This document shows positions 951-4,000 of a DNA stretch of 64,000 bases, in pieces. The notes beneath the pieces were generated by a model. The model was given only the letters and a program-made list of their open reading frames with translations. It was not told the origin of the DNA and did no database searches. A program made the position numbers and the translations under genes. The DNA comes from Macrostomum lignano (Eukaryota): NCBI GenBank assembly GCA_002269645.1, contig NIVC01003854.1:1-64000 (forward strand), written 5' to 3'. Positions within the stretch are counted from its first letter, which is position 1. Each line of letters starts with the position of its first letter.

Positions 951-1057
951 TCACTCAGAGCGTCGCGATGCTTCAAGCAGCCAGCGAGCCAAGAACTCTA
1001 TCGGATCAGACGGTCGGGCATTGGCGACTCTAGCAAGTCCTTGGCCAAGAAGAGCAC
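951..1057 (-). CDS. Terminal exon of the NWD-like gene, Dpy-30/RIIa-type dimerization-docking motif ([35 protein letters not shown])
   Basis: Acceptor ccacacag| at 1058 and a phase-1 donor ATC C|gtgagt at 1156. The translation fits the Dpy-30 pattern L..GL..VA..RP.DPI.FLA.WL, and the paralog has an equivalent exon at 13336-13445. Confidence 0.85.
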
Positions 1058-4000
1058 CTGTGTGGTTGCGACAAACATTGGTTGGGGGTGGGTGCAATGG
1101 CTGAAAATAATTAGTCGAGGGTGAATACATTCCAAATTAAATTTCGGCATACTCACGGATATGCTGAAGGTAAGGAACCTCTAGATAGGTGGAAACGGAA
1201 CAATAATTGCTCGAGTTATCCATCGAGTCAAACTTTGGGGCCGTATCTGCGTCAACGTCCGATAGGATTTCGTACAACTGCACCGGGTGATTCTCCAGCA
1301 CAATCACGAGGCGATCGTTTGATGGAGCAAGCATGAGAAACGGCTCGTCCTCGAAGATGTAGTCAAAAGCTATGGAGCCATCAGCAACCCTGTAGGCCTG
1401 AATCGTAATAAGTTTTTTTATATATTACTTTGGTGTTAGTTTAAACGACAAAAATGATCTCCCAAACGCAAAGGACGGCATCTTAAACGCTTAGAATGAC
1501 ATCGTAAAAGCCAAGCAGCTTGGTCTTGGACGCCAAGGAAATTTTGGTTTCGTGGCTTGCAAGCTACTTTACCGTACATCTAATTGTATTTTTTGTGTCG
1601 GGGTTAGGCTTTCCAGCTGGTGCTTGCATTTAACTGCAGTACTATCTACTGTTCCTATAAATTTCTGTCCAATTTATTCAGCAATGACTGATGAGCAAAC
1701 AAGGTTTGAGGTCAACAAGCACGCACACAACATTGATACTGATCGACGGGCTAAAATAGCCGAAGTGCTGGGAAGGTTGCCTCGGGGATCTGTTTAGAAG
1801 GCTTGTAGAAGATTTTGGTCTCAATTTAGGAAGCTGATCGAAGCTGAGGCCATTTTTTGAGTGACTTAGTGAGCCATTGTTTCTTACTCTTAGCGGCAGA
1901 AAGTTTCAGCTTGCTGTCTCAAAAATTGATTTCTCAGGGCCACTTCTCAACTTGTTGTACTTGCGCGGATTTTGCTGATACACCCAGAAAAACCTCTGAA
2001 CTCGAAGTGGTGCCAAACCGGGAGCCCTACGTACTAAAATTGAGTTCGCAACAATTTACAAGACTTGTTCTTCCCAACGGTTAAACCTTTGAGCCATGCG
2101 ATTTACAATAGCAAAAAAGTCGAGGACTCAATGACGTCACAATAACTGCTATCAACTTCCCAGTAATTTTTGATGAAATCCAGGCTCAGCAAGCTAATCT
2201 CAAACCTGAACTACTCGAGGCGGATCGTGGAACTCTTCCTGTTCCATGGACTGGTCATCATCCAGCGGATTGTTGTATATGTGCACCTGTCTGGCCGGCT
2301 CGTACTTCTTGCCAATCACTAGACGCCTGTCGGGCGTGACCAGCATGTCCATGAGGATGACGCTGTTCGTCGGGTCGAGATCCCGAACCAACTCGCCAGT
2401 TTCAATGTTGAACACCTTCAGCCGGTAGGTAATGCAGTGCAAGCCGTCGTCAAGCAGGTAGAGGACGCCTGCATCGAATGTTTTACTGATTGTCAGGACT
2501 TTGTAGTCGCGAGTGTCACAGACAACCAGCTGACCCGGCCAGCACATGGCATCCTTGTGACAGGCCTCCTCATAGCTGCCGATCTTGTCACAAAGATACT
2601 GTACTATAATGTGACCCGGATGCTGAGGTCTGGCAAACAGCCACACGGGACTGCACGAACTATCAGCAGCAAGTTGAGGCGAATAGCGCAAGTTGAAGTG
2701 CATTTCAAGCAGGCATTCGGACATCAATTGACTTTTAGAGTTGCCAGATTTACTCAAATTTTCGAATAGTTCATCATGTAGGGAGTCAGCATTTGCATAG
2801 CCGTAGGCAGTGTCGGTCTTTGCCGTATGGTTTGCGAGTTTCTTCATGACAAACTCCTTGACAAACTCGAAAGCTAATCGCTTGATTTCATAATCTTGAT
2901 CGCTTGGAGTCAATTTATTTTCAGCTAAAGCTAGTTCTTTCTTCGCCAATTCTAGCATCTCCATGGCAACAGATCTGCAGGCGATTTCCATCATTTCTTG
3001 TCCGACTTGAAGACACGGTAGTGGCAAAAAATTTGTAACTTTTTTAGTCGGAAGATCCATGCAAAAAATAGCTGTAAATTTGGGCATCTTCAAAATGGCA
3101 GTTTCATACGAGCTGAGAATAGTGGAGGAATTCATCAATACTTGAAGTTGGTTTTCCTCTTCCGAAAGGATGGAGCAGTACCTTGCGGGACGACCGTAAC
3201 CCTTGATGTCAGCCAGGGTGGTCAGTGGGTCGCAGGGAAAGACACTGACACTCGGGTGGTTAGAAATGAGAAACCGCATTCTACTGTGTTTCAGTGCAAT
3301 CTGGAGATACTCTACAACTTCGTCAGTATTCACTGCTTTGCCTTCAACACTGAAATCCACCGTCTCTCGCAATTCAACTCGAAAATCGACCCTGTCTAGA
3401 GGCTGGTTTTTTGGCAGCTCATTCAAAAGCACCGCTTGCTCCAAATCAATCAAATGCAGCAAATTGTCTTTAAATGTTCCTCGTAAGGCTAAGTTGACAT
3501 CGCCGAGATCCCAGTGCAGCATGACGTTCTTGAGAGTTCCGTTTATTGTTCCATTAAAGTCGGCCTCTTGAGCTGCTGTCAACTTAGTAATTTTTTTTGC
3601 AATTTTATTCCTGGTTTTATCTCTAATTTTGAATGAACCATCCTCGTCTGATCTGGAACTGTCTGAAGCACTGGATGCTTCACTACCATCATCAAGTTCG
3701 TCGATATTGTCGCCCAGTTGCAAACTTTTCTCACAAATCGTAGATTTTGTGCAACTAACGGTATCGAATTCCGTTACTCGACCGCCCAGTGCATTCGCGT
3801 CAAAGTAGGCCGTGTAGAAGCAACCAGTCGCCGGCCGATAGATAAACCGACCGTTTTTCTTTTCCATGGTAGTGACTATGGAATTTTCATAGTCGCTATC
3901 GAAATCGGGCAAAGACGAAAGGTTCAGCACCTTTACAATGATGAATGACTCATTCTCAAAGCCCTCGGGCACGCAGTTGATTATCAGGAAGTCAGTCTTT

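What the first reader, a model, noticed from the sequence alone, without database searches (positions are those of the whole stretch)
951..1397. Hidden Dpy-30/RIIa docking motif at the C-terminus of an NWD-type STAND NTPase
Seen: the ORF track ends the gene at 1137, but a phase-1 donor at 1156 and acceptor at 1058 give [40 protein letters not shown]. The paralog gives SYLKDDYTRFVR-NVLSEGFAMVADARPDDPIDFLASWL with an intron at the same position and phase (13228-13335; 108 nt and stop-free, so masked in the ORF track). Established: this pattern is the Dpy-30 motif, used for dimerisation and binding amphipathic helices (ASH2L/COMPASS; DYDC and AK proteins in axonemes). Inference: I do not know this fusion from NWD1/2. 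It would tether a STAND switch to AKAP-like, ciliary or COMPASS scaffolds.
Basis: partly seen in the sequence, partly recalled or inferred. Interest (0 to 1): 0.72.

Follow-up and report, generated by a model that had tools for sequence, protein, structure and literature searches.

The report
Flatworm NWD-like NTPase with Dpy-30 tail
A large NWD/NLR-type switch protein of the flatworm Macrostomum lignano really does end in a Dpy-30-type dimerisation/docking helix pair. The exon is already in the public gene model, the fusion looks confined to flatworms, and no paper in the searched library describes it, so it is a modest but real new domain combination.

Summary
A 99-nt GT-AG phase-1 intron (1156-1058) joins exon 7 to a last exon (1057-951). 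The spliced tail matches Pfam Dpy-30 at 45 bits (cut-off 22).

My 8-exon, 2035-aa model is identical to GenBank PAA49519.1 (Macrostomum lignano BOX15_Mlig013297g3). That annotation was built from RNA-seq, and its precomputed Pfam list already includes Dpy-30. So the exon is hidden only from a prokaryote-style ORF track.

The protein reads DUF4062 (TIR-like "NIR") – NACHT – NWD1 winged helix – degenerate WD40-like region – Dpy-30. At least six M. lignano lineages carry the tail. The intron position and phase are the same in the three loci I read.

Trematode and monogenean homologues end in a weaker, sub-threshold version of the motif. NWD2-like proteins of other phyla show no Dpy-30.

It is a 485-aa mini-gene with no NACHT: a truncated DUF4062, three or so WD-like blades, and Dpy-30.

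Most likely the tail dimerises the receptor and docks it onto an amphipathic helix. The partner is unknown, and the closest solved relatives are axonemal DYDC2 and DPY30. I rate this a new variant of a known kind, of moderate interest.

The parts
951..8962 (-). Gene 1 (Mlig013297-type). Eight exons, 2035 aa: 8962-8818, 8736-8648, 8561-8445, 8370-7292, 6972-6135, 5697-2206, 1397-1157, 1057-951.
   Evidence: All introns are GT-AG and the frame is open. The model is 100% identical to PAA49519.1.
8296..8845 (-). DUF4062 / NIR (TIR-like) N-terminal domain, aa 40-142, spread over exons 1-4.
   Evidence: Pfam PF13271 scores 35.2 bits against a cut-off of 24.7. Residues 37-125 align to the solved TEP1 TIR-like domain 11gz_A at E 8.5e-11.
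6735..7593 (-). NACHT NTPase, aa 377-556, in exons 4-5. Walker A is GCSGCGKT at aa 383 and Walker B is VLIFLDSVD at aa 478.
   Evidence: Pfam PF05729 scores 41 bits against a cut-off of 26.7. The motifs were located.
6261..6587 (-). NWD1-like winged helix-turn-helix, aa 606-714.
   Evidence: Pfam PF25469 scores 42.5 bits against a cut-off of 27.
1157..2552 (-). Conserved C-terminal WD40-like module: the last ~250 aa before the tail, from the end of exon 6 through exon 7.
   Evidence: It is conserved in six M. lignano lineages and in neodermatan homologues. Profile positions 135-190 repeatedly match blades of true WD40 proteins. Pfam itself finds no WD40 family in it.
1157..1193 (-). First part of the Dpy-30 motif ([12 protein letters not shown] + first base of the R codon). 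It lies in the same exon as the last WD-like strands.
   Evidence: Sharing an exon with NWD-homologous sequence rules out a two-gene read-through artefact.
1058..1156 (-). Intron 7: 99 nt, phase 1, GTGAGT...CACAG, with an in-frame TAA at 1139-1137.
   Evidence: The position and phase are the same in gene 2 and in the deep paralog Mlig021732.
951..1057 (-). Last exon: the core of the Dpy-30 helix-loop-helix ([34 protein letters not shown]) and the TGA stop.
   Evidence: Pfam PF05186 scores 45 bits on the tail. The AF2 model has helices 18-38 and 43-58 at pLDDT 92-97. The top Foldseek hits are 4riq DPY30 and 8j07 DYDC2.
10932..13445 (+). Gene 2, a mini-paralog with no NACHT, head-to-head with gene 1. 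It has six exons and encodes 485 aa (or 489): 10932-11052 (or -11064), 11154-11242, 11323-11439, 11499-12113, 12822-13227, 13336-13445.
   Evidence: tblastn and my gene model. P0121 (UniRef, 415 aa) is identical from exon 3 to the stop. GenBank calls only a 70-aa ORF over exons 2-3. The exon 1 donor is uncertain: AT at 11053, while a GT at 11065 keeps the frame.
13228..13335 (+). Gene 2 intron inside the Dpy-30 motif: 108 nt, phase 1, no stop in frame.
   Evidence: The splice is used in P0121.
13336..13445 (+). Gene 2 last exon, the Dpy-30 core (NVLSEGFAMVADARPDDPIDFLASWLRDYGQKHSC*).
   Evidence: Pfam PF05186 scores 35.6 bits on the tail and 30.6 bits on the whole protein.
11809..12055 (+). 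A 247-nt patch of gene 2 exon 4 that is 91% identical to gene 1 exon 6 (2552-2306). It is the only nucleotide-level match between the two genes.
   Evidence: blastn. Silent-site divergence (pS) is 0.26 here against 0.67-0.96 elsewhere. This points to local gene conversion or extreme constraint.

Best explanation
Gene 1 encodes a member of a flatworm-specific clade of NWD/NLR-like STAND NTPases. From N to C it has:
- a DUF4062/NIR (TIR-like) effector-type domain;
- a NACHT NTPase with intact Walker A and B motifs;
- the NWD1-type winged helix;
- about 1,250 residues of degenerate WD40-like sensor region;
- a genuine Dpy-30-type dimerisation/docking (D/D) helix-loop-helix as its last 45 residues, encoded across a conserved phase-1 intron.

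Shown here: the exon is real and transcribed. The motif is a bona fide Dpy-30 domain by sequence and by predicted fold. The fusion predates the divergence of at least six M. lignano lineages. A weaker version sits at the same place in trematode and monogenean homologues.

Inferred from what Dpy-30 domains do in DPY30, DYDC1/2, RSP2, NME5 and AK7: two tails pack into an X-type four-helix bundle. The receptor would then be a C-terminally linked dimer at rest. The groove of that bundle would clamp an amphipathic helix of a scaffold protein and fix the receptor at a defined cellular site. There, signal-driven NACHT oligomerisation would bring the N-terminal TIR-like domains together.

The neighbouring mini-protein lacks NACHT and keeps the same tail, so it could join the same dimer or the same docking site as a regulator or decoy. 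The docking partner is unknown.
For: Splice and gene model:
- Searches give the splice and the model. It is identical to PAA49519.1.
- That annotation was built from RNA-seq and transcript assemblies (PMC5730564).

Domains and fold:
- All four Pfam families score above their cut-offs: DUF4062, NACHT, HTH_NWD1 and Dpy-30.
- PDB sequence hits are DYDC2 at E 1.7e-5 and DPY30 at 2e-4, then DYDC1, RSP2, NME5 and AK7.
- AF2 folds the tail as two helices at pLDDT 92-97.
- About the first 35 Foldseek matches are Dpy-30 or PKA D/D domains, with rmsd 1.6-2.7 A and 42-46% identity.

Conservation:
- Tails of five further M. lignano lineages score 35.6-52.3 bits.
- The intron column and phase are the same in gene 1, gene 2 and Mlig021732.
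- An exhaustive profile search finds the C-terminal module outside M. lignano only in other flatworms: Calicophoron, Schistosoma spindale, Fasciolopsis, Cichlidogyrus, Schistocephalus and Protopolystoma.
- The Calicophoron and Schistosoma proteins carry HTH_NWD1 and AAA_16.
- The three neodermatan tails scanned (Calicophoron, Schistosoma, Cichlidogyrus) give Dpy-30 as the best or only Pfam hit at 15-22 bits. A profile of those three tails alone hits DYDC2 at E 0.001, and 13 of its 14 PDB hits are Dpy-30-motif proteins. The Fasciolopsis tail shows the same motif by eye.

Not a two-gene artefact:
- Exon 7 encodes both NWD-homologous strands and the start of the motif.
- The last exon has no in-frame ATG before the motif core.

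Context: DUF4062 is a TIR-like NADase in bacteria and in TEP1 (bioRxiv 10.64898/2026.05.01.722283 and 10.64898/2026.09.04.749371).
Against: - Dimerisation and helix binding were not and cannot be tested with these tools.
- No partner is identified.
- The neodermatan tails are below Pfam's gathering score.
- The region between the winged helix and the tail gives no Pfam WD40 hit, and its AF2 model is poor (mean pLDDT 48.7), so the 'sensor' label is an analogy.
- Human NWD1 and NWD2 showed no NADase activity in vitro, so the effector chemistry is open.
- Some public sister models (P0124, P0005, P0003, P0007) read the last exon out of frame and lack the motif. I take these as prediction errors, but alternative splicing is not excluded.
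Confidence: 0.72

Rival explanations
1. The tail only pairs family members with each other, as homodimers or as heterodimers among the NWD-Dpy-30 paralogs and the mini-protein. There is no external scaffold. The mini-protein acts as a dominant-negative or adaptor.
For: Six lineages in one genome share the tail. A mini-gene with no NACHT and a truncated DUF4062 keeps the tail, and its frame has stayed open despite saturated silent sites (dN/dS about 0.27). All Dpy-30 domains dimerise (established knowledge; 3g36 and 4riq are among the hits).
Against: Every characterised Dpy-30 dimer also binds an amphipathic helix. The mini-gene is lost from exon 3 onward in the homeologous locus, so it is dispensable at least in one copy. 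The neodermatan homologues examined here are full-length proteins or fragments, and no mini-gene was looked for in them.
Confidence: 0.25
2. The tail is an axonemal address tag. Like the C-terminal Dpy-30 motifs of AK7 and NME5 and the DYDC proteins, it would dock onto an RSP3-type helix in radial spokes or the central apparatus, placing the receptor in cilia.
For: The best PDB sequence hits, and the best Dpy-30-only hits in the 1.84-billion-protein library, are DYDC2. An enzyme or large protein with a C-terminal Dpy-30 is the AK7/NME5 layout. NPHP3, a related DUF4062-like NTPase, is ciliary (own knowledge).
Against: The margin over DPY30 is only 3-4 bits on a 40-residue motif, and Foldseek ranks DPY30-Ash2L first. 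No expression or localisation data were found.
Confidence: 0.15
3. The tail docks the protein onto ASH2L or another nuclear Dpy-30 client (COMPASS, NURF, AKAP95-type), linking the STAND switch to chromatin.
For: There is 42-46% identity and 1.6-2.3 A rmsd to the DPY30 D/D domain bound to Ash2L.
Against: No nuclear signal or chromatin domain was seen. The similarity is equally good to axonemal D/D domains. The BOD1/Shg1-like gene 27 kb away is probably coincidence.
Confidence: 0.07
4. It is an artefact: a chance helix pair, or a gene model that fuses an NWD gene to a separate small Dpy-30 gene through a read-through or polycistronic transcript.
For: M. lignano has polycistronic precursors and trans-splicing. 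Several public models disagree at this exon.
Against: Pfam E-values are 1e-9 to 1e-14 in six lineages. The motif starts in the exon that also encodes NWD-homologous strands, and the last exon has no in-frame start codon. The intron position and phase are conserved in a paralog of 42% identity. The same tail position is kept in trematodes and monogeneans.
Confidence: 0.02

Closest known systems
NWD2 / NWD1 (NACHT and WD repeat domain-containing proteins; DUF4062-NACHT-WH-WD40)
   Same: The N-terminal DUF4062/NIR, NACHT and NWD1-type winged helix are in the same order. Identity is 33-38% over the N-terminal ~45% to NWD2-like proteins of molluscs, rotifers, insects and others.
   Different: No Pfam WD40 or beta-propeller family is detected in the C-terminal 1,250 aa, only a degenerate WD-like module. 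A Dpy-30 tail is added. M. lignano has a separate canonical NWD2-like gene with WD40 families and no Dpy-30 (P0026), so this is a paralogous, flatworm-restricted clade.
DPY30 (COMPASS/MLL subunit; PDB 3g36, 4riq, 6e2h)
   Same: It has the same helix-loop-helix with the ...GLA.(V/L)A..RP.(D/N)PIEFLA..LL signature. Identity is 42-46% and rmsd about 2 A over 40-45 residues.
   Different: DPY30 is a ~100-aa stand-alone protein. Here the domain is the last 45 residues of a 2035-aa NTPase. Dimerisation and Ash2L-type binding are untested.
DYDC2/DYDC1, RSP2, NME5, AK7 (axonemal Dpy-30-motif proteins; 8j07, 8wzb, 9fqr, 7jrj, 9d2f)
   Same: DYDC2 is the closest by sequence (E 1.7e-5). AK7 and NME5 share the layout of a catalytic protein with a C-terminal Dpy-30 tag.
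   Different: Nothing is shared outside the motif, and no evidence places the flatworm proteins in axonemes.
PKA RI/RII D/D domain (Pfam RIIa)
   Same: It has the same X-type-bundle building block. It appears lower in the fold search (5hvz, 4zp3, 2hwn).
   Different: Pfam RIIa scores 17.7 bits, below the 22.4 cut-off, so this is the Dpy-30 branch and not RIIa.
TEP1 and bacterial DUF4062 (NIR) NADase STAND systems (Avs2, Swarozyc, Vulcan)
   Same: They share an N-terminal TIR-like DUF4062 next to a STAND NTPase. The TEP1 crystal domain aligns to aa 37-125 at E 8.5e-11.
   Different: NADase activity is untested here and was absent in human NWD1/2 in vitro. The papers read here describe no Dpy-30 tail in those systems.

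Membership tests
Dpy-30 motif family (Pfam PF05186) | Sequence match above the curated gathering score | tested here: met
   38.1 bits on the whole protein and 45 bits on the tail, against a cut-off of 22. Gene 2 scores 35.6 bits and the other M. lignano lineages 35.9-52.3 bits.
Dpy-30 motif family (Pfam PF05186) | Helix-loop-helix fold with the RP-x-DP-I-E-F-L-A loop and second helix | tested here: met
   AF2 gives helices 18-38 and 43-58 at pLDDT 92-97. About the first 35 Foldseek hits are D/D domains, led by 4riq and 8j07, though E-values are only about 0.04 because the domain is short.
Dpy-30 motif family (Pfam PF05186) | Homodimerisation into an X-type four-helix bundle | not testable with these tools
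   It needs SEC-MALS, AUC, a crystal or a multimer prediction. Only monomer prediction was available.
Dpy-30 motif family (Pfam PF05186) | The dimer binds an amphipathic helix of a partner | not testable with these tools
   No partner is known. This is the inferred step of the mechanism.
RIIa D/D domain (Pfam PF02197) | Sequence match above the gathering score | tested here: not met
   17.7 bits against a cut-off of 22.4.
NWD1/NWD2-type STAND NTPases | N-terminal DUF4062 (NIR, TIR-like) | tested here: met
   PF13271 scores 35.2 bits against 24.7. The TEP1 TIR-like structure 11gz_A matches at E 8.5e-11.
NWD1/NWD2-type STAND NTPases | NACHT with Walker A and B | tested here: met
   PF05729 scores 41 bits against 26.7. 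GCSGCGKT is at aa 383 and VLIFLDSVD at aa 478.
NWD1/NWD2-type STAND NTPases | NWD1-like winged helix (PF25469) | tested here: met
   42.5 bits against 27.
NWD1/NWD2-type STAND NTPases | C-terminal WD40 beta-propellers | tested here: inconclusive
   No WD40 or beta-propeller Pfam family at E<=1. The C-terminal module profile does hit WD40 blades of true WD40 proteins, and AF2 predicts beta strands at low confidence.
NWD1/NWD2-type STAND NTPases | Orthology to NWD1 or NWD2 proper | tested here: inconclusive
   The best non-flatworm hits are NWD2-like at 33-38% identity over the N-terminal half. M. lignano also has a canonical NWD2-like gene, P0026. No tree was built.
DUF4062/NIR NADases | Conserved catalytic glutamate and NAD+ hydrolysis | not tested
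   The PDB alignment stops about 28 residues before TEP1 E1008. SVTHLEF at aa 214 is a candidate by eye only. Gene 2 ends its DUF4062 at GPHFL (profile positions 3-54 of 82, 14.5 bits), so it cannot contain that region.

The most novel reading that the evidence does not exclude
Flatworms evolved a clade of NLR-like receptors with a TIR-like (NIR) domain that are permanently anchored, through a DYDC2-like Dpy-30 docking domain, to an amphipathic-helix scaffold such as the ciliary radial spoke or central apparatus. Short paralogs without NACHT that share the tail compete for the same dock as built-in regulators. This would be a site-anchored STAND surveillance system with no described counterpart in other animals, and it is also present in schistosomes and flukes.
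Probability: 0.12. Interest if true: 0.75.

Novelty: new variant of a known kind. Interest (0 to 1): 0.45.

Why it matters
NWD1, NWD2, TEP1 and NPHP3 are animal STAND proteins whose triggers and partners are largely unknown. In 2026 their DUF4062 domain was shown to be a TIR-like NADase in bacteria and in TEP1.

A clade in which the receptor carries a well-understood docking module gives a direct experimental handle. The 45-residue tail can serve as bait to find where, and to what, an NWD-type receptor is attached. M. lignano already has transgenesis (PMC5730564), and homologues exist in schistosomes and liver or rumen flukes.

It is also a practical warning for annotation. Several public models of these genes mis-splice the short intron inside the motif and lose the domain.

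Tried and rejected
1. A word-index homolog search with the 341-aa C-terminus returned only P0121. The same search with the nine-tail alignment returned three tiny fragments. Both were uninformative about taxonomic range, so that range rests on the exhaustive profile search.
2. AF2 of the 341-aa C-terminal module with five sequences gave mean pLDDT 48.7. It was too poor for a fold search and I used it only to note the helical tail.
3. I looked for expression data. No paper mentions Mlig013297, and the supplements of PMC5816591 do not list Mlig013297, Mlig021732 or Mlig012608.
4. I tested whether a mini-gene also sits head-to-head with the paralog Mlig021732. The 850-aa neighbour there is unrelated.
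5. I tested whether the mini-gene is kept at the homeologous locus. It is not: synteny breaks inside exon 3 and satellite-like repeats follow.
6. I considered and rejected a two-gene read-through artefact, RIIa membership, and the idea that the mini-gene is a recent deletion derivative of gene 1. It is about equally distant from gene 1 and P0004 (40-43% in the C-terminal part, 58-61% in the N-terminal part), and silent sites are saturated.
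Full report
WHAT IS THERE

The window is positions 1-64000 of contig NIVC01003854.1 of the Macrostomum lignano Mlig_3_7 assembly. On the minus strand I assembled an 8-exon gene:
- exons 8962-8818, 8736-8648, 8561-8445, 8370-7292, 6972-6135, 5697-2206, 1397-1157 and 1057-951;
- every intron GT-AG;
- 6108 nt and 2035 codons.

Exon 7 ends ...CAT ATC C at 1157. The intron GTGAGT...CACAG occupies 1156-1058 (99 nt, phase 1). 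Exon 8 runs from 1057 to the TGA at 953-951. Read without splicing, the frame stops at TAA 1139-1137, which is why an ORF track ends there.

The spliced C-terminus is ...[13 protein letters not shown]|[34 protein letters not shown].

IS IT A DPY-30 MOTIF, AND MORE THAN CHANCE?

Pfam gives these matches on the whole protein, all above their curated cut-offs:
- DUF4062, aa 40-142, 35.2 bits;
- NACHT, aa 377-556, 41 bits;
- HTH_NWD1, aa 606-714, 42.5 bits;
- Dpy-30, aa 1999-2031, 38.1 bits, E 1.2e-9, cut-off 22.

The tail alone scores 45 bits. RIIa scores only 17.7 bits, below its cut-off.

Against PDB sequences, the tail hits only Dpy-30-motif proteins at E below 0.1: DYDC2 (8wzb and 8j07, E about 2e-5), DPY30 (4riq, 3g36, 6e2h), DYDC1, RSP2, Sdc1 and NME5. 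AK7 (E 0.12) and a weak PKA RI-alpha match follow.

AlphaFold2 folds the 59-residue tail as two helices (residues 18-38 and 43-58) at pLDDT 92-97. In Foldseek against the PDB, about the first 35 matches are Dpy-30 D/D domains from COMPASS and from axonemes, followed by PKA D/D domains. They show 42-46% identity and 1.6-2.7 A rmsd. The E-values are weak (about 0.04), as expected for 45 residues.

IS THE SPLICE REAL?

My model is 100% identical, end to end, to GenBank PAA49519.1 (BOX15_Mlig013297g3; UniRef A0A267DLV2). Its precomputed Pfam list already contains PF05186. The NIVC annotation was derived from RNA-seq and transcript assemblies: StringTie/TACO, a de novo transcriptome, and trans-splice and poly(A) evidence (PMC5730564).

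A fusion artefact is excluded for two reasons. Exon 7 encodes both NWD-homologous beta strands and the first 12 residues of the motif. The last exon has no in-frame start codon.

Several sister models from other annotations read the last exon out of frame and so lack the motif. Examples are P0124, ending ...[24 protein letters not shown], and also P0005, P0003 and P0007. This is a recurrent mis-splicing of a short intron by gene predictors.

THE 'PARALOG'

tblastn of gene 1 against the window shows that the plus-strand copy has only:
- two DUF4062 exons (11154-11242 and 11323-11439);
- a jump to the equivalent of gene 1 aa ~1700-1920 (11499-12113);
- the last two exons (12822-13227 and 13336-13445).

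With a first exon at 10932, this gives an open 485-aa frame: a truncated DUF4062, a WD-like module, a lysine- and serine-rich linker, and Dpy-30.

There is no NACHT. The DUF4062 part stops at GPHFL (Pfam profile positions 3-54 of 82, 14.5 bits). That is before the RYG strand and before the region that holds the catalytic glutamate in TEP1. The PDB alignment to 11gz_A ends at chain residue 86, and E1008 lies about 28 residues further on.

Support for the gene 2 model:
- UniRef protein P0121 (415 aa, misnamed) is identical to my model from exon 3 to the stop, including both junctions.
- GenBank calls only a 70-aa ORF over exons 2-3.
- The exon 1 donor is doubtful: AT at 11053, while a GT 12 nt downstream keeps the frame.

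How old and how constrained it is:
- The mini-gene is old. Silent sites against gene 1 are saturated (pS 0.67-0.96), with pN about 0.3 and dN/dS about 0.27.
- It is about equally distant from gene 1 and P0004.
- A frame that has stayed open across that much divergence argues for constraint.
- One 247-nt patch (11809-12055 against 2552-2306) is 91% identical, which suggests local gene conversion.
- At the homeologous locus (NIVC01000221.1), synteny holds for window 8900-11333 and then breaks inside exon 3, where satellite-like repeats follow. The mini-gene is therefore not kept in every copy.

HOW WIDE IS THE FUSION?

In M. lignano the tail, preceded by the same conserved ~250-aa module, is found in gene 1, the mini-gene, P0004, P0006 (38% identity to gene 1 over 99% of its length), Mlig021732 (P0008/P0009) and Mlig012608 (P0125/P0270/P0271). 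These tails score 35.6-52.3 bits.

In the Mlig021732 locus the intron splits the codon at the same alignment column and in the same phase...YLDML-K|PALASS..., with donor GACATGCTGA|gtgaga and acceptor attccag|AGCCAGC.

An exhaustive HMMER search of 1.84 billion representatives with the module profile found 285 hits. Hits to the WD-like module itself come from M. lignano, from other flatworms, and from a few unnamed Logan, ENA or MetaClust fragments. Among those with a source name, the non-M. lignano ones are all flatworms:
- Calicophoron daubneyi (2006 aa);
- Schistosoma spindale (2235 aa);
- Fasciolopsis buski (2234 aa);
- Cichlidogyrus casuarinus;
- Schistocephalus solidus;
- Protopolystoma xenopodis.

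The two full-length trematode proteins I scanned (Calicophoron and Schistosoma) have HTH_NWD1 and AAA_16. The trematode and Cichlidogyrus tails look like this:
- ...DYLEQSGLRMALHSAMLEVVSQRPFDPIEALAHSL;
- ...DYFEESGLTEMMKKAMFDVVDKRPTDPISSIAKSLL;
- ...KYLEETGLAEVLENALLEVTNKRPTDPIELLARTM;
- ...QYLDEFLEQAVFDVVDKRPKDPIAFLAQTL.

For the three tails scanned (not Fasciolopsis), Dpy-30 is the best or only Pfam hit, but below threshold at 15.1-21.6 bits. A profile of those three tails alone hits DYDC2 at E 0.001, and 13 of its 14 PDB hits are Dpy-30-motif proteins.

The NWD2-like proteins of molluscs, annelids, rotifers, arthropods and nematodes among the 120 best hits have WD40 families and no PF05186. 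The canonical NWD2-like gene of M. lignano itself (P0026) also lacks it.

On the usual flatworm phylogeny (own knowledge), Macrostomorpha and Neodermata span most of Rhabditophora. The fusion is then old within flatworms and, as far as these searches reach, restricted to them. Planarians and catenulids were not sampled.

HOW IT PROBABLY WORKS

Shown here: the architecture, the intact Walker motifs, the conserved tail, and the D/D fold.

Inferred from established knowledge of Dpy-30 domains (DPY30-Ash2L; DYDC, RSP2, NME5 and AK7 in axonemes): two tails form an X-type four-helix bundle whose groove binds an amphipathic helix.

For a STAND protein this would mean a receptor that is C-terminally dimerised and anchored to a site. 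Its NACHT-driven oligomerisation would bring the N-terminal TIR-like (NIR) domains together. DUF4062 is an NADase in bacterial defence systems and in TEP1, whereas human NWD1 and NWD2 were inactive in vitro.

The mini-protein shares the tail but lacks NACHT and the catalytic part of DUF4062. It is a plausible competitor or adaptor at the same dimer or dock.

Which scaffold is used is open. DYDC2 is marginally the closest relative, which hints at an axonemal dock. DPY30-Ash2L is an equally good structural match.

NOVELTY

The protein and its Pfam hits are in public databases, but only as automatic annotation ('hypothetical protein', 'NACHT domain-containing protein'). No paper in the searched library combines Dpy-30 with NACHT. 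The only paper that mentions both DPY30 and NWD1 is a cattle GWAS.

I rate it a new variant of a known kind: an NWD/NLR-like STAND protein with a D/D docking tail, plus a relative that has no NACHT. Domain shuffling in invertebrate NLR-like genes is common, so the surprise is moderate. The value lies in the experimental handle it offers on an otherwise opaque receptor family.

Noticed in passing
window 10932-13445 (+): The 'paralog' is a 485-aa mini-gene with no NACHT: a truncated DUF4062, WD-like blades and Dpy-30. It sits head-to-head with gene 1. Public annotation covers it only in part (a 70-aa ORF in GenBank, and P0121 from exon 3 in UniRef, misnamed 'Anaphase-promoting complex subunit 1'). 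The exon 1 donor is non-canonical unless a GT 12 nt downstream is used.
   Followed up: yes
window 11809-12055 (+) vs 2306-2552 (-): A 247-nt patch is 91% identical between gene 2 exon 4 and gene 1 exon 6, while silent sites elsewhere are saturated. This looks like local gene conversion or unusually strong constraint on the block [16 protein letters not shown]...ILMD. The same block is near-identical in P0004.
   Followed up: partly
L003 (NIVC01000221.1) 1-7000 vs window 8900-13445: At the homeologous copy of the locus, synteny (89-93% nt) ends inside gene 2 exon 3 (window 11333). Satellite-like repeats that are open in several frames follow, so the mini-gene is truncated there. The chimeric public model P0005 includes part of this repeat region.
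   Followed up: partly
public proteins P0124, P0005, P0003, P0007 (M. lignano): Sister gene models of the family read the last exon out of frame, for example ...[24 protein letters not shown], and so lose the Dpy-30 motif. This is a recurrent mis-splicing of the short intron inside the motif.
   Followed up: partly
window 12198-12720 (inside gene 2 intron 4): A foldback or MITE-like element of about 520 bp. It has two arms of 40-49-nt subrepeats (TTCACAAGGTCGAAATTTCACAAC...) that are 83-94% complementary, and G/C-rich termini.
   Followed up: no
window 15137-19854 (+): Remnants of a retroelement: a gag-like ORF with a CCHC knuckle (no Pfam hit), an integrase (Integrase_H2C2 + rve, 16315-17415), and a reverse-transcriptase fragment (RVT_1, 17865-18500). 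The integrase lies before the RT, as in copia-type elements, and the frames are broken.
   Followed up: partly
window 35820-38661 (+): An ORF with a COMPASS-Shg1 (BOD1-like) domain (27 bits) is followed by PNSI repeats and long proline and glutamine runs. A COMPASS-associated family gene 27 kb from a Dpy-30-tailed gene is probably coincidence.
   Followed up: no
window 42023-42715 and 45519-46055 (+): A protein-kinase exon (Pkinase, E 8e-21) and a tRNA-His guanylyltransferase exon (Thg1, E 9e-51). These are ordinary neighbouring genes.
   Followed up: no
window 44836-45399 (-) and 52963-53661 (both strands): Tandem repeats that stay open in several frames on both strands. They are ORF-track artefacts rather than genes.
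   Followed up: no
window 57266-58408 and 62764-63810 (+): Two paralogous ORFs (380 and 348 aa). The first has a signal-peptide-like start, both share the block KLVILxDFRQGYTNLV, and neither has a Pfam hit.
   Followed up: no
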